From Bispira polyomma (lineage: Eukaryota): a DNA stretch of 64,000 nt. The position numbers and the translations under genes are program-made. The notes under the pieces were generated by a model. The model saw nothing but the letters and a program-made list of their open reading frames with translations. It was not told the origin of the DNA and ran no database searches. The first letter of the stretch is position 1; each line of letters starts with the position of its first letter. Shown in pieces: positions 40,196-64,000 of this stretch. Location: assembly GCA_965649765.1 (NCBI GenBank), contig OZ287754.1, positions 1,550,001 through 1,614,000 of the forward strand, in the 5' to 3' direction.

Positions 40196-40199
40196 AAAA

Positions 40200-41712: not shown

Positions 41713-42459
41713 ATATCAATATACTAATGATTTGGTCAGTCAATGTTTTGTTCCTTAACTTATTATCAAACATCAACTAGTGAACATCGTCAAGGCAGCT
41801 TTTAAGGCAATTAAATCTAGAGGTTTTATTTCTATTTGATCAATGAACACAAAGTTCTGTATCAGCATAGAAATTATACTTGATTGATTTGTGCTTCTTA
41901 ATGACACGACTGGGGGTGCTGTGTATAAGAAAAATAGAAGTGGACCCAAAACTGAGTCATGGGGTACAACAAACTCCAACTTAAGCATATCTGACAGAGT
42001 AGAACCTATTTTAACTGCTTGGTATTGATCTGAGAGATATGAAATAAGCCATTTTAAGACAGTGCCTTGGAAACCAAACCATGATGACAAACAGTCAAAA
42101 AGTACCCTGTAATCAATTGTATCTGAGGAAGCAAACAGATCAAGCAACATTAATGCCGTGGGTTCACCTCTGGATAAGGAAATGTGTATATCGTACTTTA
42201 CAGACTATAAAGCTGTTCTTGTGGAATGACCATGCTTGTAGGCTGATTGATTTGAATTTTTCAGTCCATTGGAATTTAGGTGCTCCGTCAGTTGTTCAGT
42301 GACAGCTCTTTCTATCAGCTTAGAGACGAAATCCAATCCAGACACTGGCCTATAGTTTTTGAGTTCTTCCTTTTGCAGTGATGGCTTTTTAATGAGAGGT
42401 GTCAATACCACCTTCTTAGGCACATCAAGGAAGGCACTGTCAACCAAACAAAAAGTTAT

Positions 42460-42531
42460 CTCCCTTTCCAGGAATCGAACCCGGGTCTCCCGCATGACAG
42501 GCGGGGATACTTACCACTATACTAACGAGGA
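42460..42531 (-). pseudogene. trnD-GTC: tRNA-Asp(GTC) copy 1, degenerate (C67A, G68A, C63T, C38T)
   Basis: 72-nt match to array consensus TCCTCGTTAGTATAGTGGTAAGTATCCCCGCCTGTCACGCGGGAGACCCGGGTTCGATTCCCGGACGGGGAG; two acceptor-stem mismatches. Confidence 0.85.
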
Positions 42532-43485
42532 GTGACAGTGAACACTTGAACTCTGCAGCTTAACATATTTACACTGGGAATAAATTGAGGCAAAATCTCA
42601 TCTTTTGAGTTCTTCGTCTGAAATTGTTTTGTTAATATCTCTTTCTGACACTGACTTACGAACTATTTGCTATAACCAAGGCTAATGTAACGACTGTAAA
42701 ACCTAAAGACACTAATAACATGATAAATTGGGGGTGGAATATCAATATACTAATGATTTGGTCAACCAATGTTCTGTTTGTTAACTTATTATCAAACATC
42801 AACTAGTGAACATCGTCAAGGTAGCTTTTAAGGCAATTAAATGTAGAGGTTTTATTTCTATTTGATCAATGAACACAAAGTTCTGTATCAGCATGGAAAT
42901 TATACTTGATTGATTTGTACTTCTTAATGACACGACTGGGGGTGCTGTGTATGAAAAAAATAGAAGTGGACCCAAAACTGAGTCATGGAGTACAGCAAAC
43001 TCTAACTTAAGCATATCTGACAGAGCAGAATCTATTCTAACTGCTTGGTATTGATCTGAGAGATATGAAATAAGCCATTTTAAGACAGTGCCTTGGAAAC
43101 CAAACCATGATGACAAACAGTCAAAAAGTACGCTGTAATCAGTTGTATCTGAGGAAGCAAACAGATCAAGCAACATTAATGCCGTGGGTTCACCTCTGGA
43201 TAAGGAAATGTGTATATCGTACTTTACAGACTATAAAGCTGTTCTTGTGGAATGACCATGCTTGTAGGCTGATTGATTTGAATTTTTCAGTCCATTGGAA
43301 TTTAAGTGCTCTGTTAGTTCTTCAGCGACAGCTCTTTCTATCAGCTTAGAGACGAAATTCAATCCAGACACTGGCCTATAGTTTTTGAGTTCTTCCTTTT
43401 GCAGTGATGGCTTTTTAATGAGAGGTGTCAATACCACCTTCTTAGGCACATCAGGGAAGGCACTGTCAACCAAACGAAAAGTTAT

Positions 43486-43557
43486 CTCCCCGTCCGGGAA
43501 TCGAACCCGGGTCTCCCGCGTGACAGGCGGGGATACTTACCACTATACTAACTAGGA
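43486..43557 (-). tRNA. trnD-GTC: tRNA-Asp(GTC) copy 2 (C5A acceptor mismatch; short 5' flank)
   Basis: Consensus except 5' TCCTAG; TTTT downstream. Confidence 0.8.
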
Positions 43558-44463
43558 ATTAATTGAGCCAAAATCTCATCTTTTGAGTTCTTCGTCTGAA
43601 ATTGTTTTGTTAATATCTCTTTCTGACACTGACTTACGAACTATTTGCTATAACCAAGGCTAATGTAACGACTGTAAAACCTAAAGACACTAATAACATG
43701 ATAAATTGGGGGTGGAATATCAATATACTAATGATTTGGTCAGCCAATGTTCTGTTTGTTAACTAATTATCAAACATCAACTAGTGAACATCTTCAAGGT
43801 AGCTTTTAAGGCAATTAAATGTAGAGGTTTTATTTCTATTTGATCAATGAACACAAAGTTCTGTATCAGCATAGAAATTATACTTGATTGATTTGTACTT
43901 CTTAATGACACGACTGGGGGTGCTGTGTATAAGAAAAATAGAAGTGGACCCAAAACTGAGTCATGGGGTACAGCAAACTCTAACTTAAGCATATCTGACA
44001 GAGCAGAATCTATTCTAACTGCTTGGTATTGATCTGAGAGATATGAAATAAGCCATTTTAAGACAGTGCCTTGGAAACCAAACCATGATGACAAACAGTC
44101 AAAAAGTACGCTGTAATCAGTTGTATCTGAGGAAGCAAACAGATCAAGCAACATTAATGTCGTGGGTTCACCTCTGGATAAGGAAATGTGTATATCGTAC
44201 TTTACAGACTATAAAGCTGTTCTTGTGGAATGACCATGCTTGTAGGCTGATTGATTTGAATTTTTCAGTCCATTGGAATTTAAGTGCTCTGTTAGTTCTT
44301 CAGCGACAGCTCTTTCTATCAGCTTAGAGACGAAATTCAATCCAGACACTGGCCTATAGTTTTTGAGTTCTTCCTTTTGCAGTGATGGCTTTTTAATGAG
44401 AGGTGTCAATACCACCTTCTTAGGCACATCAGGGAAGGCACTGTCAACCAAACGAAAAGTTAC

Positions 44464-44535
44464 CTCCCCATCCGCGAATCGAACCCGGGTCTCCCACGTG
44501 ACAGGCGGGGATACTTACCACTATACTAACGAGGA
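44464..44535 (-). pseudogene. trnD-GTC: tRNA-Asp(GTC) copy 3 (C62G T-stem mismatch, C67T, C40T)
   Basis: Three substitutions versus consensus, one breaking the T-stem/B box. Confidence 0.75.
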
Positions 44536-45489
44536 GTGATGGTGAATGCTTGAACTCTGCAGCTTAACATATTTACACTAGGAATTAATTGAGGCAAAAT
44601 CTCATCTTTTGAGTTCTTCGTCTGAAATTGTTTTGTTAATATCTCTTTCTGACACTGACTTACGAACTATTTGCTATAACCAAGGCTAATGTAACGACTG
44701 TAAAACCTAAAGACACTAATAACATGATAAATTGGGGGTGGAATATCAATATACTAATGATTTGGTCAGCCAATGTTCTGTTTGTTAACTTATTATCAAA
44801 CATCAACTAGTGAACATCGTCAAGGTAGCTTTTAAGGCAATTAAATCTAGAGGTTTTATTTCTATTTGATCAATGAACACAAAGTTCTGTATCAGCATAG
44901 AAATTATACTTGATTGATTTGTACTTCTTAATGACACGACTGGGGGTGCTGTGTATAAGAAAAATAGAAGTGGACCCAAAACTGAGTCATGGGGTACAGC
45001 AAACTCTAACTTAAGCATATCTGACAGAGCAGAATCTATTCTAACTGCTTGGTATTGATCTGAGAGATATGAAATAAGCCATTTTAAGACAGTGCCTTGG
45101 AAACCAAACCATGATGACAAACAGTCAAAAAGTACGCTATAATCAATTGTATCTGAGGAAGCAAACAGATCAAGCAACATTAATGCCGTGGGTTCACCTC
45201 TGGATAAGGAAATGTGTATATCGTACTTTACAGACTATAAAGCTGTTCTTGTGGAATGACCATGCTTGTAGGCTGATTGATTTGAATTTTTCAGTCCATT
45301 GGAATTTAAGTGCTCTGTTAGTTCTTCAGCAATAGCTCTTTCTATCAGCTTAGAGACGAAATTCAATCCAGACACTGGCCTATAGTTTTTGAGTTCTTCC
45401 TTTTGCAGTGATGGCTTTTTAATGAGAGGTGTCAATACCACCTTCTTAGGCACATCAGGGAAGGCACTGTCAACCAAACGAAAATTTAT

Positions 45490-45561
45490 CTCCCCATCCG
45501 GGAATCGAACCCGGGTCTCCCGCGTGACAGGCGGGGATACTTACCACTATACTAACGAGGA
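45490..45561 (-). tRNA. trnD-GTC: tRNA-Asp(GTC) copy 4 (C67T, G-U wobble)
   Basis: Cloverleaf intact, GTC anticodon, TTTT terminator. Confidence 0.9.
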
Positions 45562-46514
45562 GTGATGGTGAATGCTTGAACTCTGCAGCTTAACATATTT
45601 ACACTAGGAATTAATTGAGGCAAAATCTCATCTTTTGAGTTCTTCGTCTGAAATTGTTTTGTTAATATCTCTTTCTGACACTGACTTACGAACTATTTGC
45701 TATAACCAAGGCTAATGTAACGACTGTAAAACCTAAAGACACTAATAACATGATAAATTGAGGGGTAATATCAATATACTAATGATTTGGTCAACCAATG
45801 TTCTGTTCGTTAACTTATTATCAAACATCAACTAGTGAACATCGTCAAAGCAGCTTTAAAGGCAATTAAATGTAGAGGTTTTATTTCTATTTGATCAATG
45901 AACACAAAGTTCTGTATCAGCATAGAAATTATACTTGATTGATTTGTACTTCTTAATGACACGACTGGGGGTGCTGTGTATAAGAAAAATAGAAGTGGAC
46001 CCAAAACTGAGTCATGGGGTACAGCAAACTCTAACTTAAGCATATCTGACAGAGCAGAATCTATTCTAACTGCTTGGTATTGATCTGAGAGATATGAAAT
46101 AAGCCATTTTAAGACAGTGCCTTGGAAACCAAACCATGATGACAAACAGTCAAAAAGTAAACTATAATCAATTGTATCTGAGGAAGCAAACAGATCAAGC
46201 AACATTAATGCCGTGGGTTCACCTCTGGATTAGGAAATGTGTATATCGTACTTTACAGACTATAAAGCTGTTCTTGTGGAATGACCATGCTTGTAGGCTG
46301 ATTGATTTGAATTTTTCAGTCCATTGGAATTTAAGTGCTCTGTTAGTTCTTCAGCGACAGCTCTTTCTATCAGCTTAGAGACGAAATTCAATCCAGACAC
46401 TGGCCTATAGTTTTTGAGTTCTTCCTTTTGCAGTGATGGCTTTTTAATGAGAGGTGTCAATACCACCTTCTTAGGCACATCAGGGAAGGCACTGTCAACC
46501 AAACGAAAAGTTAT

Positions 46515-46586
46515 CTCCCCGTCCGGGAATCGAACCCAGGTCTCCCGCGTGACAGGCAGGGATACTTACCACTATACTAACGAGGA
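46515..46586 (-). tRNA. trnD-GTC: tRNA-Asp(GTC) copy 5 (C29T, C50T wobbles; short flank)
   Basis: Cloverleaf retained with two extra G-U pairs. Confidence 0.85.
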
Positions 46587-47491
46587 ATTAATTGAGGCAA
46601 AATCTCATCTTTTGAGTTCTTCGTCTGAAATTGTTTTGTTAATATCTCTTTCTGACACTGACTTACGAACTATTTGCTATAACCAAGGCTAATGTAACGA
46701 CTGTAAAACCTAAAGACACTAATAACATGATAAATTGAGGGGTAATATCAATATACTAATGATTTGGTCAACCAATGTTCTGTTCGTTAACTTATTATCA
46801 AACATCAACTAGTGAACATCGTCAAAGCAGCTTTAAAGGCAATTAAATGTAGAGGTTTTATTTCTATTTGATCAATGAACACAAAGTTCTGTATCAGCAT
46901 AGAAATTATACTTGATTGATTTGTACTTCTTAATGACACGACTGGGGGTGCTGTGTATAAGAAAAATAGAAGTGGATCCAAAACTGAGTCATGGGGTACA
47001 GCAAACTCTAACTTAAGCATATCTGACAGAGCAGAATCTATTCTAACTGCTTGGTATTGATCTGAGAGATATGAAATAAGCCATTTTAAGACAGTGCCTT
47101 GGAAACCAAACCATGATGACAAACAGTCAAAAAGTAAACTATAATCAATTGTATCTGAGGAAGCAAACAGATCAAGCAACATTAATGCCGTGGGTTCACC
47201 TCTGGATTAGGAAATGTGTATATCGTACTTTACAGACTATAAAGCTGTTCTTGTGGAATGACCATGCTTGTAGGCTGATTGATTTGAATTTTTCAGTCCA
47301 TTGGAATTTAAGTGCTCTGTTAGTTCTTCAGCGACAGCTCTTTCTATCAGCTTAGAGACGAAATTCAATCCAGACACTGGCCTATAGTTTTTGAGTTCTT
47401 CCTTTTGCAGTGATGGCTTTTTAATGAGAGGTGTCAATACCACCTTCTTAGGCACATCAGGGAAGGCACTGTCAACCAAACGAAAAGTTAT

Positions 47492-47563
47492 CTCCCCGTC
47501 CGGGAATCGAACCCAGGTCTCCCGCGTGACAGGCAGGGATACTTACCACTATACTAACGAGGA
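47492..47563 (-). tRNA. trnD-GTC: tRNA-Asp(GTC) copy 6 (same as copy 5)
   Basis: Same C29T and C50T variants; short flank. Confidence 0.85.
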
Positions 47564-48468
47564 ATTAATTGAGGCAGAATCTCATCTTTTGAGTTCTTCG
47601 TCTGAAATTGTTTTGTTAATATCTCTTTCTGACACTGACTTACGAACTATTTGCTATAACCAAGGCTAATGTAACGACTGTAAAACCTAAAGACACTAAT
47701 AACATGATAAATTGAGGGGTAATATCAATATACTAATGATTTGGTCAACCAATGTTCTGTTCGTTAACTTATTATCAAACATCAACTAGTGAACATCGTC
47801 AAAGCAGCTTTAAAGGCAATTAAATGTAGAGGTTTTATTTCTATTTGATCAATGAACACAAAGTTCTGTATCAGCATAGAAATTATACTTGATTGATTTG
47901 TACTTCTTAATGACACGACTGGGGGTGCTGTGTATAAGAAAAATAGAAGTGGACCCAAAACTGAGTCATGGGGTACAGCAAACTCTAACTTAAGCATATC
48001 TGACAGAGCAGAATCTATTCTAACTGCTTGGTATTGATCTGAGAGATATGAAATAAGCCATTTTAAGACAGTGCCTTGGAAACCAAACCATGATGACAAA
48101 CAGTCAAAAAGTAAACTATAATCAATTGTATCTGAGGAAGCAAACAGATCAAGCAACATTAATGCCGTGGGTTCACCTCTGGATTAGGAAATGTGTATAT
48201 CGTACTTTACAGACTATAAAGCTGTTCTTGTGGAATGACCATGCTTGTAGGCTGATTGATTTGAATTTTTCAGTCCATTGGAATTTAAGTGCTCTGTTAG
48301 TTCTTCAGCGATAGCTCTTTCTATCAGCTTAGAGACGAAATTCAATCCAGACACTGGCCTATAGTTTTTGAGTTCTTCCTTTTGCAGTGATGGCTTTTTA
48401 ATGAGAGGTGTCAATACCACCTTCTTAGGCACATCAGGGAAGGCACTGTCAACCAAACGAAAAGTTAT

Positions 48469-48540
48469 CTCCCCGTCCCGGAATCAAACCCGGGTCTCCC
48501 GCATGACAGGCGGGGATACTTACCACTATACTAACGAGGA
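48469..48540 (-). pseudogene. trnD-GTC: tRNA-Asp(GTC) copy 7 (C56T B-box, C63G, C38T)
   Basis: T-loop reads TTTGA instead of TTCGA; T-stem mismatch. Confidence 0.8.
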
Positions 48541-49493
48541 GTGATGGTGAATGCTTGAACTCTGCAGCTTAACATATTTACACTAGGAATTAATTGAGGC
48601 AAAATCTCATCTTTTGAGTTCTTCGTCTGAAATTGTTTTGTTAATATCTCTTTCTGACACTGACTTACGAACTATTTGCTATAACCAAGGCTAATGTAAC
48701 GACTGTAAAACCTAAAGACACTAATAACATGATAAATTGAGGGGTAATATCAATATACTAATGATTTGGTCAACCAATGTTCTGTTCGTTAACTTATTAT
48801 CAAACATCAACTAGTGAACATCGTCAAAGCAGCTTTAAAGGCAATTAAATGTAGAGGTTTTATTTCTATTTGATCAATGAACACAAAGTTCTGTATCAGC
48901 ATAGAAATTATACTTGATTGATTTGTACTTCTTAATGACACGACTGGGGGTGCTGTGTATAAGAAAAATAGAAGTGGACCCAAAACTGAGTCATGGGGTA
49001 CAGCAAACTCTAACTTAAGCATATCTGACAGAGCAGAATCTATTCTAACTGCTTGGTATTGATCTGAGAGATATGAAATAAGCCATTTTAAGACAGTGCC
49101 TTGGAAACCAAACCATGATGACAAACAGTCAAAAAGTACGCTGTAATCAGTTGTATCTGAGGAAGCAAACAGATCAAGCAACATTAATGCCGTGGGTTCA
49201 CCTCTGGATAAGGAAATGTGTATATCGTACTTTACAGACTATAAAGCTGTTCTTGTGGAATGACCATGCTTGTAGGCTGATTGATTTGAATTTTTCAGTC
49301 CATTGGAATTTAAGTGCTCTGTTAGTTCTTCAGCGACAGCTCTTTCTATCAGCTTAGAGAGGAAATTCAATCCAGACACTGGCCTATAGTTTTTGAGTTC
49401 TTCCTTTTGCAGTGATGGCTTTTTAATGAGAGGTGTCAATACCACCTTCTTAGGCACATCAGGGAAGGCACTGTCAACCAAACGAAAAGTTAT

Positions 49494-49565
49494 CTCCCCG
49501 TCCGGGAATCGAACCCAGGTCTCCCGCGTGACAGGCGGGGATACTTACCACTATACTAACGAGGA
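49494..49565 (-). tRNA. trnD-GTC: tRNA-Asp(GTC) copy 8 (C50T; short flank)
   Basis: Single wobble variant. Confidence 0.9.
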
Positions 49566-50470
49566 ATTAATTGAGCCAAAATCTCATCTTTTGAGTTCTT
49601 CGTCTGAAATTGTTTTGTTAATATCTCTTTCTGACACTGACTTACGAACTATTTGCTATAACCAAGGCTAATGTAACGACTGTAAAACCTAAAGACACTA
49701 ATAACATGATAAATTGAGGGGTAATATCAATATACTAATGATTTGGTCAACCAATGTTCTGTTCGTTAACTTATTATCAAACATCAACTAGTGAACATCG
49801 TCAAAGCAGCTTTAAAGGCAATTAAATGTAGAGGTTTTATTTCTATTTGATCAATGAACACAAAGTTCTGTATCAGCATAGAAATTATACTTGATTGATT
49901 TGTACTTCTTAATGACACGACTGGGGGTGCTGTGTATAAGAAAAATAGAAGTGGACCCAAAACTGAGTCATGGGGTACAGCAAACTCTAACTTAAGCATA
50001 TCTGACAGAGCAGAATCTATTCTAACTGCTTGGTATTGATCTGAGAGATATGAAATAAGCCATTTTAAGACAGTGCCTTGGAAACCAAACCATGATGACA
50101 AACAGTCAAAAAGTACGCTGTAATCAGTTGTATCTGAGGAAGCAAACAGATCAAGCAACATTAATGTCGTGGGTTCACCTCTGGATAAGGAAATGTGTAT
50201 ATCATACTTTACAGACTATAAAGCTGTTCTTGTGGAATGACCATGCTTGTAGGCTGATTGATTTGAATTTTTCAGTCCATTGGAATTTAAGTGCTCTGTT
50301 AGTTCTTCAGCGACAGCTCTTTCTATTAGCTTAGAGAGGAAATTCAATCCAGACACTGGCCTTTAGTTTTTGAGTTCTTCCTTTTGCAGTGATGGCTTTT
50401 TAATGAGAGGTGTCAATACCACCTTCTTAGGCACATCAGGGAAGGCACTGTCAACCAAATGAAAAGTTAT

Positions 50471-50542
50471 CTCCCCGTCCGGGAATCGAACCCGGGTCTC
50501 CCGCGTGACAGGCGGGGATACTTACCACTATACTAACGAGGA
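50471..50542 (-). tRNA. trnD-GTC: tRNA-Asp(GTC) copy 9, consensus (short flank)
   Basis: Full cloverleaf, A and B boxes, G73, TTTT 5 nt downstream. Confidence 0.97.
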
Positions 50543-51447
50543 ATTAATTGAGGCAAAATCTCATCTTTTGAGTTCTTCGTCTGAAATTGTTTTGTTAATA
50601 TCTCTTTCTGACACTGACTTACGAACTATTTGCTATAACCAAGGCTAATGTAACGACTGTAAAACCTAAAGCACTAATAACATGATAAATTGGGGGTGGA
50701 ATATCAATATACTAATGATTTGGTCAACCAATGTTCTGTTTGTTAACTTATTATCAAACATCAACTAGTGAACATCGTCAAGGTAGCTTTTAAGGTAATT
50801 AAATGTAGAGGTTTTATTTCTATTTGATCAATGAACACAAAGTTCTGTATCAGCATGGAAATTATACTTGATTGATTTGTACTTCTTAATGATACGACTG
50901 GGGGTGCTGTGTATGAATAAAATAGAAGTGGACCCAAAACTGAGTCATGGGGTACAGCAAACTCTAACTTAAGCATATCTGACAGAGCAGAACCTATTTT
51001 AACTGCTTGGTATTGATCTGAGAGATATGAAATAAGCCATTTTAAGACAGTGCCTTGGAAACCAAACCATGATGACAAACAGTCAAAAAGTACGTTGTAA
51101 TCAGTTGTATCTGAGGAAGCAAACAGATCAAGCAACATTAATGCCGTGGGTTCACCTCTGGATTAGGAAATGTGTATATCGTACTTTACAGACTATAAAA
51201 CTGTTCTTGTGGAATGACCATGCTTGTAGGCTGATTGATTTGAATTTTTCAGTCCATTGGAATTTAAGTGCTCTGTTAGTTCTTCAGCGATAGCTCTTTC
51301 TATCAGCTTAGAGACGAAATTCAATCCAGACACTGGCCTATAGTTTTTGAGTTCTTCCTTTTGCAGTGATGGCTTTTTAATGAGAGGTGTCAATACCACC
51401 TTCTTAGGCACATCAGGGAAGGCACTGTCAACCAAACGAAAAGTTAT

Positions 51448-51519
51448 CTCCCCGTCCGGGAATCGAACCCGGGTCTCCCGCGTGACAGGCGGGGATACTT
51501 ACCACTATACTAACGAGGA
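51448..51519 (-). tRNA. trnD-GTC: tRNA-Asp(GTC) copy 10, consensus (long flank)
   Basis: Full cloverleaf and terminator. Confidence 0.97.
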
Positions 51520-52472
51520 GTGATGGTGAATGCTTGAACTCTGCAGCTTAACATATTTACACTAGGAATTAATTGAGGCAAAATCTCATCTTTTGAGTTC
51601 TTCGTCTGAAATTGTTTTGTTAATATCTCTTTCTGACACTGACTTACGAACTATTTGCTATAACCAAGGCTAATGTAACGACTGTAAAACCTAAAGACAC
51701 TAATAACATGATAAATTGAGGGGTAATATCAATATACTAATGAATTGGCCAACCAATGTTCTGTTTGTTAACTTATTATCAAACATCAACTAGTGAACAT
51801 CGTCAAAGCAGCTTTAAAGGCAATTAAATGTAGAGATTTTATTTCTATTTGATCAATGAACACAAAGTTCTGTATCAGCATAGAAATTATACTTGATTGA
51901 TTTGTACTTCTTAATGACACGACTGGGGGTGCTGTGTATAAGAAAAATAGAAGTGGACCCAAAACTGAGTCATGGGGTACAGCAAACTCTAACTTAAGCA
52001 TATCTGACAGAGCAGAACCTATTTTAACTGCTTGGTATTGATCTGAGAGATATGAAATAAGCCATTTTAAGACAGTGCCTTGGAAACCAAACCATGATGA
52101 CAAACAGTCAAAAAGTACGTTGTAATCAGTTGTATCTGAGGAAGCAAACAGATCAAGCAACATTAATGCCGTGGGTTCACCTCTGGATAAGGAAATGTGT
52201 ATATCGTACTTTACAGACTATAAAGCTGTTCTTGTGGAATGACCATGCTTGTAGGCTGATTGATTTGAATTTTTCAGTCCATTGGAATTTAAGTGCTCTG
52301 TTAGTTCTTCAGCGACAGCTCTTTCTATCAGCTTAGAGAGGAAATTCAATCCAGACACTGGCCTATAGTTTTTGAGTTCTTCCTTTTGCAGTGATGGCTT
52401 TTTAATGAGAGGTGTCAATACCACCTTCTTAGGCACATCAGGGAAGGCACTGTCAACCAAACGAAAAGTTAC

Positions 52473-52544
52473 CTCCCCATCCGCGAATCGAACCCGGGTC
52501 TCCCGCGTGACAGGCGGGGATACTTACCACTATACTAACGAGGA
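52473..52544 (-). pseudogene. trnD-GTC: tRNA-Asp(GTC) copy 11 (C62G, C67T; haplotype of copy 3)
   Basis: T-stem mismatch shared with copy 3. Confidence 0.75.
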
Positions 52545-53499
52545 GTGATGGTGAATGCTTGAACTCTGCAGCTTAACATATTTACACTAGGAATTAATTG
52601 AGGCAAAATCTCATCTTTTGAGTTCTTCGTCTGAAATTGTTTTGTTAATATCTCTTTCTGACACTGACTTACGAACTATTTGCTATAACCAAGGCTAATG
52701 TAACGACTGTAAAACCTAAAAACACTAATAACATGATAAATTGAGGGGTGGAATATCAATATACTAATGATTTGGTCAGCCAATGTTCTGTTTGTTAACT
52801 TATTATCAAACATCAACTAGTGAACATCGTCAAGGTAGCTTTTAAGGCAATTAAATCTAGAGGTTTTATTTCTATTTGATCAATGAACACAAAGTTCTGT
52901 ATCAGCATAGAAATTATACTTGATTGATTTGTACTTCTTAATGACACGACTGGGGGTGCTGTGTATAAGAAAAATAGAAGTGGACCCAAAACTGAGTCAT
53001 GGGGTACAGCAAACTCTAACTTAAGCATATCTGACAGAGCAGAATCTATTCTAACTGCTTGGTATTGATCTGAGAGATATGAAATAAGCCATTTTAAGAC
53101 AGTGCCTTGGAAACCAAACCATGATGACAAACAGTCAAAAAGAACGTTGTAATCAGTTGTATCTGAGGAAGCAAACAGATGAAGCAACATTAATGCCGTG
53201 GGTTCACCTCTGGATAAGGAAATGTGTATATCGTACTTTACAGACTATAAAGCTGTTCTTGTGGAATGACCATGCTTGTAGGCTGATTGATTTGAATTTT
53301 TCAGTCCATTGGAATTTAAGTGCTCTGTTAGTTCTTCAGCGACAGCTCTTTCTATCAGCTTAGAGAGGAAATTCAATCCAGACACTGGCCTATAGTTTTT
53401 GAGTTCTTCCTTTTGCAGTGATGGCTTTTTAATGAGAGGTGTCAATACCACCTTCTTAGGCACATCAGGGAAGGCACTGTCAACCAAACGAAAAGTTAT

Positions 53500-53571
53500 C
53501 TCCACGTCCGGGAATCGAACCCGGGTCTCCCGCGTGACAGGCGGGGATACTTACCACTATACTAACGAGGA
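53500..53571 (-). tRNA. trnD-GTC: tRNA-Asp(GTC) copy 12 (G69T; short flank)
   Basis: U4-G69 changed to U-U, otherwise consensus. Confidence 0.85.
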
Positions 53572-54476
53572 ATTAATTGAGGCAAAATCTCATCTTTTGA
53601 GTTCTTCGTCTGAAATTGTTTTGTTAATATCTCTTTCTGACACTGACTTACGAACTATTTGCTATAACCAAGGCTAATGTAACGACTGTAAAACCTAAAG
53701 CACTAATAACATGATAAATTGGGGGTGGAATATCAATATACTAATGATTTGGTCAACCAATGTTCTGTTTGTTAACTTATTATCAAACATCAACTAGTGA
53801 ACATCGTCAAGGTAGCTTTTAAGGTAATTAAATGTAGAGGTTTTATTTCTATTTGATCAATGAACACAAAGTTCTGTATCAGCATGGAAATTATACTTGA
53901 TTGATTTGTACTTCTTAATGACACGACTGGGGGTGCTGTGTATGAAAAAAATAGAAGTGGACCCAAAACTGAGTCATGGGGTACAGCAAACTCTAACTTA
54001 AGCATATCTGACAGAGCAGAACCTATTTTAACTGCTTGGTATTGATCTGAGAGATATGAAATAAGCCATTTTAAGACAGTGCCTTGGAAACCAAACCATG
54101 ATGACAAACAGTCAAAAAGTACGTTGTAATCAGTTGTATCTGAGGAAGCAAACAGATCAAGCAACATTAATGCCGTGGGTTCACCTCTGGATAAGGAAAT
54201 GTGTATATCGTACTTTACAGACTATAAAGCTGTTCTTGTGGAATGACCATGCTTGTAGGCTGATTGATTTGAATTTTTCAGTCCATTGGAATTTAAGTGC
54301 TCTGTTAGTTCTTCAGCGACAGCTCTTTCTATCAGCTTAGAGAGGAAATTCAATCCAGACACTGGCCTATAGTTTTTGAGTTCTTCCTTTTGCAGTGATG
54401 GCTTTTTAATGAGAGGTGTCAATACCACCTTCTTAGGCACATCAGGGAAGGCACTGTCAACCAAACGAAAAGTTAT

Positions 54477-54548
54477 CTCCCCGTCCGGGAATTGAACCCG
54501 GGTCTCCCGCGTGACAGGCGGGGATACTTACCACTATACTAACGAGGA
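54477..54548 (-). tRNA. trnD-GTC: tRNA-Asp(GTC) copy 13 (G57A, tolerated)
   Basis: B box GTTCAATTC still fits GTTCRANNC. Confidence 0.93.
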
Positions 54549-55501
54549 GTGATGGTGAATGCTTGAACTCTGCAGCTTAACATATTTACACTAGGAATTA
54601 ATTGAGGCAAAATCTCATCTTTTGAGTTCTTCGTCTGAAATTGTTTTGTTAATATCTCTTTCTGACACTGACTTACGAACTATTTGCTATAACCAAGGCT
54701 AATGTAACGACTGTAAAACCTAAAGACACTAATAACATGATAAATTGAGGGGTAATATCAATATACTAATGATTTGGTCAACCAATGTTCTGTTCGTTAA
54801 CTTATTATCAAACATCAACTAGTGAACATCGTCAAAGCAGCTTTAAAGGCAATTAAATGTAGAGGTTTTATTTCTATTTGATCAATGAACACAAAGTTCT
54901 GTATCAGCATAGAAATTATACTTGATTGATTTGTACTTCTTAATGACACGACTGGGGGTGCTGTGTATAAGAAAAATAGAAGTGGACCCAAAACTGAGTC
55001 ATGGGGTACAGCAAACTCTAACTTAAGCATATCTGACAGAGCAGAATCTATTCTAACTGCTTGGTATTGATCTGAGAGATATGAAATAAGCCATTTTAAG
55101 ACAGTGCCTTGGAAACCAAACCATGATGACAAACAGTCAAAAAGTAAACTATAATCAATTGTATCTGAGGAAGCAAACAGATCAAGCAACATTAATGCCG
55201 TGGGTTCACCTCTGGATTAGGAAATGTGTATATCGTACTTTACAGACTATAAAGCTGTTCTTGTGGAATGACCATGCTTGTAGGCTGATTGATTTGAATT
55301 TTTCAGTCCATTGGAATTTAAGTGCTCTGTTAGTTCTTCAGCGATAGCTCTTTCTATCAGCTTAGAGACGAAATTCAATCCAGACACTGGCCTATAGTTT
55401 TTGAGTTCTTCCTTTTGCAGTGATGGCTTTTTAATGAGAGGTGTCAATACCACCTTCTTAGGCACATCAGGGAAGGCACTGTCAACCAAACGAAAAGTTA
55501 T

Positions 55502-55573
55502 CTCCCCGTCCGGGAATCGAACCCAGGTCTCCCGCGTGACAGGCGGGGATACTTACCACTATACTAACGAGGA
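55502..55573 (-). tRNA. trnD-GTC: tRNA-Asp(GTC) copy 14 (C50T; short flank)
   Basis: Single wobble variant. Confidence 0.9.
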
Positions 55574-56478
55574 ATTAATTGAGGCAAAATCTCATCTTTT
55601 GAGTTCTTCGTCTGAAATTGTTTTGTTAATATCTCTTTCTGACACTGACTTACGAACTATTTGCTATAATCAAGGCTAATGTAACGACTGTAAAACCTAA
55701 AGCACTAATAACATGATAAATTGGGGGTGGAATATCAATATACTAATGATTTGGTCAACCAATGTTCTGTTTGTTAACTTATTATCAAACATCAACTAGT
55801 GAACATCGTCAAGGTAGCTTTTAAGGTAATTAAATGTAGAGGTTTTATTTCTATTTGATCAATGAACACAAAGTTCTGTATCAGCATGGAAATTATACTT
55901 GATTGATTTGTACTTCTTAATGACACGACTGGGGGTGCTGTGTATGAAAAAAATAGAAGTGGACCCAAAACTGAGTCATGGGGTACAGCAAACTCTAACT
56001 TAAGCATATCTGACAGAGCAGAATCTATTCTAACTGCTTGGTATTGATCTGAGAGATATGAAATAAGCCATTTTAAGACAGTGCCTTGGAAACCAAACCA
56101 TGATGACAAACAGTCAAAAAGTAAACTATAATCAATTGTATCTGAGGAAGCAAACAGATCAAGCAACATTAATGCCGTGGGTTCACCTCTGGATTAGGAA
56201 ATGTGTATATCGTACTTTACAGACTATAAAGCTGTTCTTGTGGAATGACCATGCTTGTAGGCTGATTGATTTGAATTTTTCAGTCCATTGGAATTTAAGT
56301 GCTCTGTTAGTTCTTCAGCGATAGCTCTTTCTATCAGCTTAGAGACGAAATTCAATCCAGACACTGGCCTATAGTTTTTGAGTTCTTCCTTTTGCAGTGA
56401 TGGCTTTTTAATGAGAGGTGTCAATACCACCTTCTTAGGCACATCAGGGAAGGCACTGTCAACCAAACGAAAAGTTAT

Positions 56479-56550
56479 CTCCCCGTCCGGGAATCGAACC
56501 CAGGTCTCCCGCGTGACAGGCGGGGATACTTACCACTATACTAACGAGGA
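56479..56550 (-). tRNA. trnD-GTC: tRNA-Asp(GTC) copy 15 (C50T; short flank)
   Basis: Single wobble variant. Confidence 0.9.
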
Positions 56551-57455
56551 ATTAATTGAGGCAAAATCTCATCTTTTGAGTTCTTCATCTGAAATTGTTT
56601 TGTTAATATCTCTTTCTGACACTGACTTACGAACTATTTGCTATAACCAAGGCTAATGTAACGACTGTAAAACCTAAAGCACTAATAACATGATAAATTG
56701 GGGGTGGAATATCAATATACTAATGATTTGGTCAACCAATGTTCTGTTTGTTAACTTATTATCAAACATCAACTAGTGAACATCGTCAAGGTAGCTTTTA
56801 AGGTAATTAAATGTAGAGGTTTTATTTCTATTTGATCAATGAACACAAAGTTCTGTATCAGCATAGAAATTATACTTGATTGATTTGTACTTCTTAATGA
56901 CACGACTGGGGGTGCTGTGTATAAGAAAAATAGAAGTGGACCCAAAACTGAGTCATGGGGTACAGCAAACTCTAACTTAAGCATATCTGACAGAGCAGAA
57001 TCTATTCTAACTGCTTGGTATTGATCTGAGAGATATGAAATAAGCCATTTTAAGACAGTGCCTTGGAAACCAAACCATGATGACAAACAGTCAAAAAGAA
57101 CGTTGTAATCAGTTGTATCTGAGGAAGCAAACAGATGAAGCAACATTAATGCCGTGGGTTCACCTCTGGATAAGGAAATGTGTATATCGTACTTTACAGA
57201 CTATAAAGCTGTTCTTGTGGAATGACCATGCTTGTAGGCTGATTGATTTGAATTTTTCAGTCCATTGGAATTTAAGTGCTCTGTTAGTTCTTCAGCGACA
57301 GCTCTTTCTATCAGCTTAGAGAGGAAATTCAATCCAGACACTGGCCTATAGTTTTTGAGTTCTTCCTTTTGCAGTGATGGCTTTTTAATGAGAGGTGTCA
57401 ATACCACCTTCTTAGGCACATCAGGGAAGGCACTGTCAACCAAACAAAAAGTTAT

Positions 57456-57527
57456 CTCCCCGTCCGGGAATCGAACCCGGGTCTCCCGCGTGACAGGCGG
57501 GGATACTTACCACTATACTAACGAGGA
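57456..57527 (-). tRNA. trnD-GTC: tRNA-Asp(GTC) copy 16, consensus (long flank, T5 terminator)
   Basis: Full cloverleaf; TTTTT downstream. Confidence 0.97.
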
Positions 57528-58480
57528 GTGATGGTGAATGCTTGAACTCTGCAGCTTAACATATTTACACTAGGAATTAATTGAGGCAAAATCTCATCTT
57601 TTGAGTTCTTCGTCTGAAATTGTTTTGTTAATATCTCTTTCTGACACTGACTTACGAACTATTTGCTATAACCAAGGCTAATGTAACGACTGTAAAACCT
57701 AAAGCACTAATAACATGATAAATTGGGGGTGGAATATCAATATACTAATGATTTGGTCAACCAATGTTCTGTTTGTTAACTTATTATCAAACATCAACTA
57801 GTGAACATCGTCAAGGTAGCTTTTAAGGTAATTAAATGTAGAGGTTTTATTTCTATTTGATCAATGAACACAAAGTTCTGTATCAGCATGGAAATTATAC
57901 TTGATTGATTTGTACTTCTTAATGACACGACTGGGGGTGCTGTGTATGAGAAAAATAGAAGTGGACCCTAAACTGAGTCATGGGGTACAGCAAACTCTAA
58001 CTTAAGCATATCTGACAGAGCAGAACCTATTTTAACTGCTTGGTATTGATCTGAGAGATATGAAATAAGCCATTTTAAGACAGTGCCTTGGAAACCAAAC
58101 CATGATGACAAACAGTCAAAAAGTACGCTGTAATCAATTGTATCTGAGGAAGCAAACAGATCAAGCAACATTAATGCTGTGGGTTCACCTCTGGATAAGG
58201 AAATGTGTATATCATACTTTACAGACTATAAAGCTGTTCTTGTGGAATGACCATGCTTGTAGGCTGATTGATTTGAATTTTTCAGTCCATTGGAATTTAA
58301 GTGCTCTGTTAGTTCTTCAGCGACAGCTCTTTCTATCAGCTTAGAGACGAAATTCAATCCAGACACTGGCCTATAGTTTTTGAGTTCTTCCTTTTGCAGT
58401 GATGGCTTTTTAATGAGAGGTGTCAATACCACCTTCTTAGGCACATCAGGGAAGGCACTGTCAACAAAACGACAAATTAT

Positions 58481-58552
58481 CTACATGTCCAGGAATCGAA
58501 CCCGGGTCTCCCGCGTGACAGGCGGGGATACTTACCACTATACTAACGAGGA
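58481..58552 (-). pseudogene. trnD-GTC: tRNA-Asp(GTC) copy 17, acceptor stem disrupted
   Basis: 3' strand ACATGTAG instead of ACGGGGAG; also C63T. Confidence 0.85.
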
Positions 58553-59506
58553 GTGATGGTGAATGCTTGAACTCTGCAGCTTAACATATTTACACTAGGA
58601 ATTAATTGAGGCAAAATCTCATCTTTTGAGTTCTTCGTCTGAAATTGTTTTGTTAATATCTCTTTCTGACACTGACTTACGAACTATTTGCTATAATCAA
58701 GGCTAATGTAACGACTGTAAAACCTAAAGACACTAATAACATGATAAATTGGGGGTGGAATATCAATATACTAATGATTTGGTCGGCCAATGTTCTGTTC
58801 GTTAACTTATTATCAAACATCAACTAGTGAACATCGTCAAAGCAGCTTTTAAGGCAATTAAATGTAGAGGTTTTATTTCTATTTGATCAATGAACACAAA
58901 GTTCTGTATCAGCATGGAAATTATACTTGATTGATTTGTACTTCTTAATGACACGACTGGGGGTGCTGTGTATGAGAAAAATAGAAGTGGACCCAAAACT
59001 GAGTCATGGGGTACAGCAAACTCTAACTTAAGCATATCTGAAAGAGCAGAACCTATTTTAACTGCTTGGTATTGATCTGAGAGATATGAAATAAGCCATT
59101 TTAAGACAGTGCCTTGGAAACCAAACCATGATGACAAACAGTCAAAAAGTACGCTGTAATCAATTGTATCTGAGGAAGCAAACAGATCAAGCAACATTAA
59201 TGCCGTGGGTTCACCTCTGGATAAGGAAATGTGTATATCGTACTTTACAGACTATAAAGCTGTTCTTGTGGAATGACCATGCTTGTAGGCTGATTGATTT
59301 GAATTTTTCAGTCCATTGGAATTTAAGTGCTCTGTTAGTTCTTCAGCGACAGCTCTTTCTATCAGCTTAGAGACGAAATTCAATCCAGACACTGGCCTAT
59401 AGTTTTTGAGTTCTTCCTTTTGCAGTGATGGCTTTTTAATGAGAGGTGTCAATACCACCTTCTTAGGCACATCAGGGAAGGCACTGTCAACCAAACGAAA
59501 AGTTAT

Positions 59507-59578
59507 CTCCCCGTCCGGGAATCAAACCCGGGTCTCCCGCGTGACAGGCGGGGATACTTACCACTATACTAACGAGGA
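59507..59578 (-). pseudogene. trnD-GTC: tRNA-Asp(GTC) copy 18 (C56T B-box)
   Basis: Invariant C56 lost, otherwise consensus. Confidence 0.75.
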
Positions 59579-60531
59579 GTGATGGTGAATGCTTGAACTC
59601 TGCAGCTTAACATATTTACACTAGGAATTAATTGAGGCAAAATCTCATCTTTTGAGTTCTTCGTCTGAAATTGTTTTGTTAATATCTCTTTCTGACACTG
59701 ACTTACGAACTATTTGCTATAACCAAGGCTAATGCAACGACTGTAAAACCTAAAGACACTAATAACATGATAAATTGAGGGGTAATATCAATATACTAAT
59801 GATTTGGTCAACCAATGTTCTGTTCGTTAACTTATTATCAAACATCAACTAGTGAACATCGTCAAAGCAGCTTTAAAGGCAATTAAATGTAGGGGTTTTA
59901 TTTCTATTTGATCAATGAACACAAAGTTCTGTATCAGCATAGAAATTATACTTGATTGATTTGTACTTCTTAATGACACGACTGGGGGTGCTGTGTATAA
60001 GAAAAATAGAAGTGGACCCAAAACTGAGTCATGGGGTACAGCAAACTCTAACTTAAGCATATCTGACAGAGCAGAATCTATTCTAACTGCTTGGTATTGA
60101 TCTGAGAGATATGAAATAAGCCATTTTAAGACAGTGCCTTGGAAACCGAACCATGATGACAAACAGTCAAAAAGAACGTTGTAATCAGTTGTATCTGAGG
60201 AAGCAAACAGATGAAGCAACATTAATGCCGTGGGTTCACCTCTGGATAAGGAAATGTGTATATCGTACTTTACAGACTATAAAGCTGTTCTTGTGGAATG
60301 ACCATGCTTGTAGGCTGATTGATTTGAATTTTTCAGTCCATTGGAATTTAAGTGCTCTGTTAGTTCTTCAGCGACAGCTCTTTCTATCAGCTTAGAGAGG
60401 AAATTCAATCCAGACACTGGCCTATAGTTTTTGAGTTCTTCCTTTTGCAGTGATGGCTTTTTAATGAGAGGTGTCAATACCACCTTCTTAGGCACATCAG
60501 GGAAGGCACTGTCAACAAAACGACAAATTAT

Positions 60532-60603
60532 CTACATGTCCAGGAATCGAACCCGGGTCTCCCGCGTGACAGGCGGGGATACTTACCACTATACTAACAA
60601 GGA
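60532..60603 (-). pseudogene. trnD-GTC: tRNA-Asp(GTC) copy 19, acceptor stem disrupted
   Basis: ACATGTAG haplotype plus C63T and C5T. Confidence 0.85.
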
Positions 60604-61089
60604 GTGATGGTGAATGCTTGAACTCTGCAGCTTAACATATTTACACTAGGAATTAATTGAGGCAAAATCTCATCTTTTGAGTTCTTCGTCTGAAATTGTT
60701 TTGTTAATATCTCTTTCTGACACTGACTTACGAACTATTTGCTATAACCAAGGCTAATGTAACGACTGTAAAACCTAAAGACACTAATAACATGATAAAT
60801 TGAGGGGTAATATCAATATACTAATGATTTGGTCAACCAATGTTCTGTTCGTTAACTTATTATCAAACATCAACTAGTGAACATCGTCAAAGCAGCTTTT
60901 AAGGTAATTAAATGTAGAGGTTTTATTTCTATTTGATCAATGAACACAAAGTTCTGTATCAGCATGGAAATTATACTTGATTGATTTGTACTTCTTAATG
61001 ACACGACTGGGGGGCTTTTTAATGAGAGGTGTCAATACCACCTTCTTAGGCACATCAGGGAAGGCACTGTCAACCAAACGAAAAGTTAT

Positions 61090-61161
61090 CTCCCCGTCCG
61101 GGAATCGAACCCGGGTCTCCCGCGTGACAGGCGGGGATACTTACCACTATACTAACGAGGA
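61090..61161 (-). tRNA. trnD-GTC: tRNA-Asp(GTC) copy 20, consensus (in the internally deleted unit)
   Basis: Full cloverleaf and terminator. Confidence 0.97.
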
Positions 61162-62115
61162 GTGATGGTGAATGCTTGAACTCTGCAGCTTAACATATTT
61201 ACACTAGGAATTAATTGAGGCAAAATCTCATCTTTTGAGTTCTTCGTCTGAAATTGTTTTGTTAATATCTCTTTCTGACACTGACTTACGAACTATTTGC
61301 TATAATCAAGGCTAATGTAACGACTGTAAAACCTAAAGACACTAATAACATGATAAATTGGGGGTGGAATATCAATATACTAATGATTTGGTCGGCCAAT
61401 GTTCTGTTCGTTAACTTATTATCAAACATCAACTAGTGAACATCGTCAAAGCAGCTTTTAAGGCAATTAAATGTAGAGGTTTTATTTCTATTTGATCAAT
61501 GAACACAAAGTTCTGTATCAGCATGGAAATTATACTTGATTGATTTGTACTTCTTAATGACACGACTGGGGGTGCTGTGTATGAGAAAAATAGAAGTGGA
61601 CCCAAAACTGAGTCATGGGGTACAGCAAACTCTAACTTAAGCATATCTGACAGAGCAGAACCTATTTTAACTGCTTGGTATTGATCTGAGAGATATGAAA
61701 TAAGCCATTTTAAGACAGTGCCTTGGAAACCAAACCATGATGACAAACAGTCAAAAAGTACGCTGTAATCAATTGTATCTGAGGAAGCAAACAGATCAAG
61801 CAACATTAATGCCGTGGGTTCACCTCTGGATAAGGAAATGTGTATATCGTACTTTACAGACTATAAAGCTGTTCTTGTGGAATGACCATGCTTGTAGGCT
61901 GATTGATTTGAATTTTTCAGTCCATTGGAATTTAAGTGCTCTGTTAGTTCTTCAGCGACAGCTCTTTCAATCAGCTTAGAGACGAAATTCAATCCAGACA
62001 CTGGCCTATAGTTTTTGAGTTCTTCCTTTTGCAGTGATGGCTTTTTAATGAGAGGTGTCAATACCACCTTCTTAGGCACATCAGGGAAGGCACTGTCAAC
62101 CAAACGAAAAGTTAT

Positions 62116-62187
62116 CTCCCCGTCCGGGAATCAAACCCGGGTCTCCCGCGTGACAGGCGGGGATACTTACCACTATACTAACGAGGA
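62116..62187 (-). pseudogene. trnD-GTC: tRNA-Asp(GTC) copy 21 (C56T B-box)
   Basis: Same variant as copy 18. Confidence 0.75.
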
Positions 62188-63141
62188 GTGATGGTGAATG
62201 CTTGAACTCTGCAGCTTAACATATTTACACTAGGAATTAATTGAGGCAAAATCTCATCTTTTGAGTTCTTCGTCTGAAATTGTTTTGTTAATATCTCGTT
62301 CTGACACTGACTTACGAACTATTTGCTATAATCAAGGCTAATGTAACGACTGTAAAACCTAAAGACACTAATAACATGATAAATTGGGGGTGGAATATCA
62401 ATATACTAATGATTTGGTCGGCCAATGTTCTGTTCGTTAACTTATTATCAAACATCAACTAGTGAACATCGTCAAAGCAGCTTTTAAGGCAATTAAATGT
62501 AGAGGTTTTATTTCTATTTGATCAATGAACACAAAGTTCTGTATCAGCATGGAAATTATACTTGATTGATTTGTACTTCTTAATGACACGACTGGGGGTG
62601 CTGTGTATGAGAAAAATAGAAGTGGACCCAAAACTGAGTCATGGGGTACAGCAAACTCTAACTTAAGCATATCTGACAGAGCAGAACCTATTTTAACTGC
62701 TTGGTATTGATCTGAGAGATATGAAATAAGCCATTTTAAGACAGTGCCTTGGAAACCAAACCATGATGACAAACAGTCAAAAAGTACGCTGTAATCAGTT
62801 GTATCTGAGGAAGCAAACAGATCAAGCAACATTAATGCCGTGGGTTCACCTCTGGATAAGGAAATGTGTATATCGTACTTTACAGACTATAAAGCTGTTC
62901 TTGTGGAATGACCATGCTTGTAGGCTGATTGATTTGAATTTTTCAGTCCATTGGAATTTAAGTGCTCTGTTAGTTCTTCAGCGACAGCTCTTTCTATCAG
63001 CTTAGAGACGAAATTCAATCCCGACACTGGCCTATAGTTTTTGAGTTCTTCCTTTTGCAGTGATGGCTTTTTAATGAGAGGTGTCAATACCACCTTCTTA
63101 GGCACATCAGGGAAGGCACTGTCAACAAAATGACAAATTAT

Positions 63142-63213
63142 CTACATGTCAGGGAATCGAACCCAGGTCTCCCGCGTGACAGGCGGGGATACTTACCACT
63201 ATACTAACGAGGA
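63142..63213 (-). pseudogene. trnD-GTC: tRNA-Asp(GTC) copy 22, acceptor stem disrupted
   Basis: ACATGTAG haplotype plus G64T and C50T. Confidence 0.85.
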
Positions 63214-64000
63214 GTGATGTTGAATGCTTGAACTCTGCAGCTTAACATATTTACACTAGGAATTAATTGAGGCAAAATCTCATCTTTGAGTTCTTCGTCT
63301 GAAATTGTTTTGTTAATATCTCGTTCTGACACTGACTTACGAACTATTTGCTATAATCAAGGCTAATGTAACGACTGTAAAACCTAAAGACACTAATAAC
63401 ATGATAAATTGGGGGTGGAATATCAATATACTAATGATTTGGTCAGCCAATGTTCTGTTTGTTAACTTATTATCAAACATCAACTAGTGAACATCATCAA
63501 GGTAGCTTTTAAGGCAATTAAATGTAGAGGTTTTATTTCTATTTGATCAATGAACACAAAGTTCTGTATCAGCATAGAAATTATACTTGATTGATTTGTA
63601 CTTCTTAATGACACGACTGGGGGTGCTGTGTATAAGAAAAATAGAAGTGGACCCAAAACTGAGTCATGGGGTACAGCAAACTCTAACTTAAGCATATCTG
63701 ACAGAGCAGAATCTATTCTAACTGCTTGGTATTGATCTGAGAGATATGAAATAAGCCATTTTAAGACAGTGCCTTGGAAACCAAACCATGATGACAAACA
63801 GTCAAAAAGTACGCTATAATCAATTGTATCTGAAGAAGCAAACAGATCAAGCAACATTAATGCCGTGGGTTCACCTCTGGATAAGGAAATGTGTATATCG
63901 TACTTTACAGACTATAAAGCTGTTCTTGTGGAATGACCATGCTTGTAGGCTGATTGATTTGAATTTTTCAGTCCATTGGAATTTAAGTGCTCTGTTAGTT

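What the first reader, a model, noticed from the sequence alone, without database searches (positions are those of the whole stretch)
41713..64000. A tRNA-Asp gene array of more than 22 kb whose spacer is a dead LINE reverse transcriptase
Seen: 23 tandem units of about 1 kb. Each has roughly 0.9 kb of L2/CR1 ORF2 RT sequence and one 72-nt tRNA-Asp(GTC) on the same strand. All full-length units share the RT lesions (stop after HSTRT(A/V)L, frameshift before the catalytic motif, YADD reduced to YADT/HADT), so the LINE was dead before amplification. In contrast, four tRNA copies are consensus and about seven more carry only tolerated changes. The T-stem CCGGG/CCCGG is a compensated variant of the vertebrate CGGGG/CCCCG I recall, consistent with a real host tRNA. 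Known: tandem tRNA arrays and TE-derived satellites each exist; I do not know of a description of this combination. Inference: the tRNA is the selected cargo and the LINE remnant is a co-opted spacer. Possible roles, all untested: Asp-tRNA dosage (for example Asp-rich biomineral proteins), a TFIIIC insulator cluster, or a small-RNA source against LINEs.
Basis: partly seen in the sequence, partly recalled or inferred. Interest (0 to 1): 0.92.

Follow-up and report, generated by a model that had tools for sequence, protein, structure and literature searches.

The report
tRNA-Asp array carrying dead LINE piece
A normal aspartate tRNA gene was copied head-to-tail 37 times together with a broken piece of a common retrotransposon; the array is real and some copies look active, but this kind of arrangement is already known (for example in humans) and nothing shows that the transposon piece was recruited for a job beyond lending a transcription stop signal.

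Summary
Observation confirmed and extended. The window holds 22 tRNA-Asp(GTC) genes at about 1-kb spacing; the array continues to 37 copies (36.7 kb). Each unit is about 0.24 kb unique leader, the tRNA, and about 0.71 kb (not 0.9) of dead LINE reverse transcriptase that starts at the first base after the tRNA and supplies its T4/T5 Pol III terminator. A sister array lies 540 kb away: tRNA consensus 0/72 differences, spacer 76/912 (MK-like p=1e-6), and mutations pile up in the inner flanks, as at transcribed tRNA genes. But within the array the tRNA varies more than the spacer, 23 of 37 copies are damaged, ten perfect dispersed copies exist, and the genome has a third Asp array plus Thr, Ala and Ser/Leu arrays without RT spacers. 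The LINE family is abundant, so capture by chance is expected. Precedent: the human 1q23.3 tDNA VNTR unit holds tRNA-Asp and a partial LINE (PMC4041453). Verdict: ordinary birth-and-death tRNA array with a hitch-hiking LINE piece; co-option unsupported. The scan had only notes on this same stretch, none on other DNA. No read or RNA evidence could be obtained.

The parts
41713..64000 (-). Window part of array A: 22 tRNA-Asp genes in units of 977/1026 bp; the array runs on to genome position C7:1628441 (37 copies, 36.7 kb)
51448..51519 (-). Example consensus tRNA-Asp(GTC); the other consensus copies begin at 50471, 57456 and 61090; identical to ten dispersed genes
45490..56550 (-). Seven copies with tolerated changes only (low coordinates 45490, 46515, 47492, 49494, 54477, 55502, 56479), mostly C-to-U giving G-U pairs
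42460..63213 (-). Eleven damaged copies (broken stem pairs, B-box C56 or identity base C38 changed): 42460, 43486, 44464, 48469, 52473, 53500, 58481, 59507, 60532, 62116, 63142
   Evidence: classes by my own rule set from tRNA structure
51760..52472 (-). Example LINE piece: ORF2 residues about 552-785 (RT domain), begins at the first base after the tRNA; stop, frameshift and lost catalytic aspartate
51439..51442 (-). T4 run at +6 to +9 after the tRNA (T4 or T5 near every copy; the first run is broken in one haplotype of damaged copies), inside LINE codons: the likely Pol III terminator
   Evidence: four or more T as terminator PMC3141230
51520..51759 (-). Example leader of about 240 bp, found only in arrays A and B, not LINE-derived by four tests
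51520..51568 (-). The 49 bp directly upstream of the tRNA, deleted in 13 of 37 copies (the 977-bp units)
60604..61089 (-). Spacer of the 558-bp unit, with an internal deletion of most of the LINE piece
40142..41712 (+). A different decayed LINE (endonuclease to start of RT) that is cut off by the array's left edge; it does not resume at the right edge

Best explanation
An ordinary tandem tRNA gene array in birth-and-death turnover. Shown: a genuine tRNA-Asp gene with its own leader became joined at its 3' end to an already dead RT fragment of an abundant LINE family; a T run in the LINE codons sits where a Pol III terminator is needed; this 1-kb unit was amplified, gave two arrays 540 kb apart that were then homogenised separately; the tRNA consensus stayed unchanged while the spacer diverged about 8-9%. 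Inferred: unequal recombination drives the expansion; a minority of copies (about 14 of 37 in A) are transcribed and add to the Asp-tRNA pool, others decay through CpG deamination and transcription-associated mutation; weak purifying selection (helped perhaps by preferential re-amplification of active copies) keeps the consensus functional. The LINE piece is a passenger whose only evident use is the terminator.
For: tRNA consensus A vs B 0/72 differences against 76/912 in the spacer; with 47 vs 189 within-array alleles Fisher p=1.2e-6, non-CpG only p=0.008. Non-CpG alleles in the inner flanks (-20..-1, +1..+10) 15/58 vs 140/1646 in bulk spacer, p=1e-4, window permutation 4e-4, the pattern reported for active tRNA genes (PMC6130373). 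CpG sites in the tRNA change C>T at 14/16 but G>A at 6/16 sites, p=0.009; spacer 9/20 vs 7/20. Spacer differences fall evenly on codon positions, 15/11/14, pN/pS 0.62, p=0.17. LINE family abundant: 23026 candidates, dispersed copies 76-83% identical. Other tRNA arrays in this genome without RT homology. Precedents PMC4041453, PMC11067881.
Against: No RNA, ChIP or read evidence. Within arrays the tRNA is not protected: 23/37 (A) and 17/23 (B) copies are damaged, which also fits a silenced, methylated cluster. Allele counts are not fully independent events, and with strictly fixed non-CpG sites alone the test is weak (p=0.08). The junction falls exactly at the tRNA 3' end, which a random duplication would rarely do.
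Confidence: 0.62

Rival explanations
1. A largely silent, methylated satellite: the unit amplifies neutrally, and the tRNA consensus stays put only because it is converted by, or re-seeded from, functional Asp genes, or because copies that bind Pol III factors recombine more often. No selection on array output.
For: All eight CpGs mutated, spacer CpG o/e 0.34; most copies damaged while ten dispersed genes are perfect; a third Asp array on C9 is dominated by a stem-breaking variant; clustered tDNAs are silenced by methylation in Arabidopsis (PMC7544208); tRNA genes are fork-pausing and damage sites in yeast (PMC5413955).
Against: Pure neutrality predicts about ten consensus differences in the tRNA between A and B, none is seen; inner-flank hypermutation points to transcription now or in the recent past; conversion over only 72 bp of homology is inefficient (own knowledge).
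Confidence: 0.22
2. One reading: the LINE remnant is a co-opted spacer and the array is an adaptation (Asp dosage, TFIIIC insulator cluster, or small-RNA source against LINEs).
For: The LINE does donate the T run behind the tRNA; the unit was amplified twice; read-through of a T4 terminator could yield LINE-sense RNA (inference).
Against: Spacer diverges freely and takes deletions of 11, 27, 49 and about 470 bp; it is about 20% diverged from its own family and sense-oriented, a poor anti-LINE guide; arrays for other amino acids exist without it; only 4 of at least 21 perfect Asp genes lie in array A.
Confidence: 0.08
3. Origin by an RNA route (concerns the founding junction only): a LINE RT switched template onto a tRNA, or a 5'-truncated LINE inserted right behind the gene, giving tRNA fused to LINE as in U6/L1 chimeras; later tandem amplification.
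For: LINE protein homology begins at the first base after the discriminator; same strand; parent copies share the sequence from +12 on.
Against: No CCA; a 240-bp genomic leader is kept; no LINE 3' end or target-site duplication found; the LINE 3' piece 510 bp past array B belongs to another subfamily. The last tRNA of B is followed by a T-rich non-LINE tail, so T-run microhomology with the LINE can explain the junction by DNA duplication.
Confidence: 0.2
4. Misassembly or collapsed/expanded repeat.
For: No read support obtained; only one study holds the sequence.
Against: Units differ by 2.1% on average with only two identical pairs among 35, form a nested tree, have clean unique flanks and no N; a diverged sister array exists; contigs of two samples hold about half of the sampled words.
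Confidence: 0.03

Closest known systems
Human 1q23.3 tDNA VNTR (Darrow and Chadwick 2014, PMC4041453)
   Same: Tandem units about 98% identical; each holds tRNA-Asp and a partial LINE (7.37% of the unit) plus an LTR fragment; between human and mouse the tRNAs are conserved and the spacer is not.
   Different: Human unit is 7.3 kb, GC-rich, five tRNAs and a conserved CTCF site; here 1 kb, one tRNA, LINE is about 70% of the unit and abuts the tRNA.
Single-tRNA tandem arrays of Hydractinia and Nematostella (PMC11067881); Entamoeba arrays (PMC2652664)
   Same: Evenly spaced tRNA copies with near-identical spacers of hundreds to thousands of bases, for many amino acids in one genome.
   Different: The passages read do not describe an RT-coding spacer; Entamoeba spacers hold short tandem repeats and nearly all tRNA genes are arrayed.
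5S rDNA arrays with TE fragments in the non-transcribed spacer (review PMC10946416)
   Same: Pol III gene array whose spacer carries amplified TE remnants, including LINE pieces in fish.
   Different: 5S rRNA rather than tRNA.
Clustered tDNAs of Arabidopsis (PMC7544208)
   Same: Extra tRNA copies in tandem clusters beside a dispersed set; CpG decay here hints at methylation.
   Different: Silencing is shown there; here it is untested and flank mutation suggests some activity.
tRNA-derived SINEs and U6/L1-type chimeric retrocopies (own knowledge)
   Same: Pol III gene 5', LINE sequence 3', same strand, sharp junction.
   Different: LINE part is internal RT, not the 3' tail; copies are tandem, not dispersed; tRNA is intact.

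Membership tests
Tandem tRNA gene array | Head-to-tail units each with a full tRNA gene | tested here: met
Tandem tRNA gene array | Gene equals the host's functional isoacceptor | tested here: met
   ten dispersed genes 100% identical
Tandem tRNA gene array | Gene conserved while spacer diverges between arrays | tested here: met
   0/72 vs 76/912
Tandem tRNA gene array | Pol III terminator behind the gene | tested here: met
   T4/T5 within 20 bases
Tandem tRNA gene array | Transcription by Pol III | not testable with these tools
   no RNA run listed; indirect sign only
Tandem tRNA gene array | Copy-number variation between individuals | not testable with these tools
APE-type non-LTR retrotransposon fragment | RT homology; full-length relatives with AP endonuclease plus RVT_1; dispersed family in the genome | tested here: met
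L2/CR1 clade | Grouping with reference L2 or CR1 elements in an RT tree | not tested
   no named references available; motifs fit from memory only
tRNA-derived SINE | LINE-derived 3' tail and dispersed copies | tested here: not met
   internal RT piece; leader and junction only in the two arrays
Small RNA-LINE chimeric retrocopy | Exact RNA 3' end fused to 5'-truncated LINE, same strand | tested here: met
Small RNA-LINE chimeric retrocopy | Mature end (CCA), LINE 3' end and target-site duplication | tested here: inconclusive
   no CCA, no matching 3' end found; 5' end of array B not readable
Neutral TE-derived satellite | All parts of the unit diverge alike between arrays | tested here: not met

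The most novel reading that the evidence does not exclude
A self-amplifying tRNA unit: a LINE-donated terminator at a precise junction made a compact Pol III cassette whose active copies are preferentially re-duplicated, so the consensus stays functional without selection for dosage, while read-through yields tRNA-LINE transcripts, a possible first step towards a SINE or a small-RNA source. The paired arrays would allow the two causes (selection, activity-biased amplification) to be separated.
Probability: 0.12. Interest if true: 0.55.

Novelty: new member of a known kind. Interest (0 to 1): 0.27.

Why it matters
Modestly. It is a clean natural experiment on how tRNA arrays turn over: two sister arrays, a neutral spacer datable against its parent LINE family, and a perfect dispersed gene set. 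It shows at single-locus level both faces reported for active tRNA genes (more mutation, no substitution), and a LINE lending a Pol III terminator. It does not reveal a new kind of element, and annotators should not count all 37 copies as functional genes.

Tried and rejected
(2) The LINE 3' piece downstream of array B as continuation of the unit's LINE: different motif, no shared parent loci. (3) Array inserted into the left-flank LINE: it does not resume on the right. (4) Coding constraint on the RT piece: none. (5) RT or other Pfam domains in Thr, Ala, Ser/Leu spacers: none found, a limited test. (8) No tRNA-less joined sequence was sent to any search tool; it was only aligned locally. (9) The organism was not identified, so the biomineral idea could not be examined.
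Full report
Observation. ARAGORN and Rfam agree on 22 tRNA-Asp(GTC) genes on the minus strand between 42460 and 63213. A unit aligned back to the window tiles it from 41713 to the end, in units of 977 or 1026 bp and one of 558 bp. The window is C7:1550001-1614000 of a 1.035-Gb assembly.

Anatomy of the unit. Reading 5' to 3': about 240 bp of leader, the 72-nt tRNA, then about 710 bp of LINE. The LINE piece hits Pfam RVT_1 and aligns to residues 552 to about 787 of 1030-residue proteins that carry AP endonuclease and RVT_1 domains. Protein homology starts at the first base after the discriminator, and the T4/T5 run at +6 to +10, the expected Pol III terminator (four or more T, PMC3141230), lies inside LINE codons. 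The stop, the frameshift and the loss of the second catalytic aspartate are shared by the units and by the sister array, so the LINE was dead before amplification. The parent family is dispersed at 76-83% DNA identity and aligns only to the LINE part of the spacer; related RT frames number in the thousands, some open for over 1000 codons. The leader occurs only in the two arrays and shows no significant LINE homology in any test. Thirteen copies lack the 49 bp directly upstream of the tRNA. The L2/CR1 label is plausible from memory but was not tested against named references.

Genomic context. Array B, same unit, lies at C7:2171634 to about 2199780; 23 tRNA copies were read, 5 consensus, 1 tolerated, 17 damaged or degenerate. 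A and B form separate clades. A third Asp array with about 965-bp spacing lies on C9 at 8.19-8.25 Mb, mostly with a stem-breaking variant, and does not match the A/B junction or leader. Tandem arrays of Thr, Ala and Ser/Leu genes lie on C3 and C11, without RT homology in their spacers. LINE pieces also sit beside array A, beside array B and inside the Thr cluster. Arrays of tRNA genes and LINE debris are both common here, so one unit capturing a LINE piece needs no special cause.

Selection test. Between A and B the tRNA consensus differs at 0 of 72 sites, the spacer at 76 of 912, including 12 of 33 CpG columns. Against within-array alleles (47 and 189) this gives Fisher p=1.2e-6; non-CpG only p=0.008; with strictly fixed non-CpG sites p=0.08. 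Within A, however, the tRNA is more variable than the spacer (non-CpG pi 0.026 vs 0.016; CpG 0.166 vs 0.069). The excess extends to the 20 bases upstream and 10 downstream (15/58 vs 140/1646, p=1e-4; permutation 4e-4), the windows in which active tRNA genes are hypermutable (PMC6130373). CpG changes in the tRNA favour C>T over G>A (14/16 vs 6/16 sites, p=0.009; none such in the spacer), which fits non-template-strand deamination or tolerance of G-U pairs; both imply function. The spacer shows no codon bias (15/11/14, pN/pS 0.62, p=0.17) and tolerates deletions. Allele counts are approximate stand-ins for events, so the p values are indicative.

Mechanism. Shown: dead LINE, precise junction, LINE-borne T run, two rounds of amplification (parent about 20% away, A vs B about 9%, within A 2.1%), constant tRNA consensus, many damaged copies. 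Inferred: unequal recombination expands and homogenises the arrays; a minority of copies is transcribed; the rest decay; weak selection or preferential re-amplification of active copies keeps the consensus. For the founding junction I favour DNA duplication through T-run microhomology, because the last tRNA of B is followed by a T-rich non-LINE tail, there is no CCA, and the genomic leader is kept; an RNA route remains open (0.2). The LINE 3' piece 510 bp past B is from another subfamily.

Comparison. The combination is described: each unit of the human 1q23.3 tDNA VNTR holds tRNA-Asp, a partial LINE and an LTR fragment, and only the tRNAs and a CTCF site are conserved in mouse (PMC4041453). 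Single-tRNA arrays with near-identical spacers occur in Hydractinia and Nematostella (PMC11067881) and Entamoeba (PMC2652664); TE pieces in 5S spacers are frequent (PMC10946416); clustered tDNAs can be silenced by methylation (PMC7544208). What is particular here is the compactness (LINE is 70% of the unit) and the LINE-donated terminator. It is not a SINE (internal RT piece, not dispersed) and not a purely neutral satellite.

Limits. No RNA run was listed; three contig sets from one study, two samples, hold about half of the sampled words. The organism was not identified.

Verdict. Real feature; new member of a known kind; interest 0.27.

Noticed in passing
G000 C7:2171634-2199780 (L015:6630 onward, L016, L017): Sister array B of the same unit, about 28 tRNA-Asp copies, spacer 86-91% identical to A, with alternating sub-types.
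   Followed up: yes
G000 C9:8194735-8254536 and beyond: Third tRNA-Asp array, about 965-bp spacing, at least 29 and perhaps over 70 copies, mostly with a G-to-A change in the anticodon stem; spacer not read.
   Followed up: partly
L018-L021 (C3:9.92-9.96 Mb), L022-L024 (C11:11.51-11.54 Mb), L025-L029 (C3:12.38-12.44 Mb): Tandem arrays of tRNA-Thr (TGT and CGT), tRNA-Ala (TGC) and tRNA-Ser/Leu; several Ser-type copies are called with a TGC (Ala) anticodon on an 82-nt body, possible anticodon-shift variants or pseudogenes.
   Followed up: partly
L021:933-2417: A fairly well preserved 5'-truncated LINE with a short tandem tail inserted at the edge of the Thr array.
   Followed up: partly
   Followed up: partly
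window 15168-15893 and 39287-39741: Tyrosine-recombinase-like frames (Phage_integrase, weak), probably DIRS/Ngaro-type retrotransposon remains.
   Followed up: no
window 38051-38841: Short frames with a zf-RVT hit, end of another non-LTR element.
   Followed up: no
L015:5100-5420: Tandem tail of about 40-bp units at the 3' end of the LINE piece downstream of array B.
   Followed up: no
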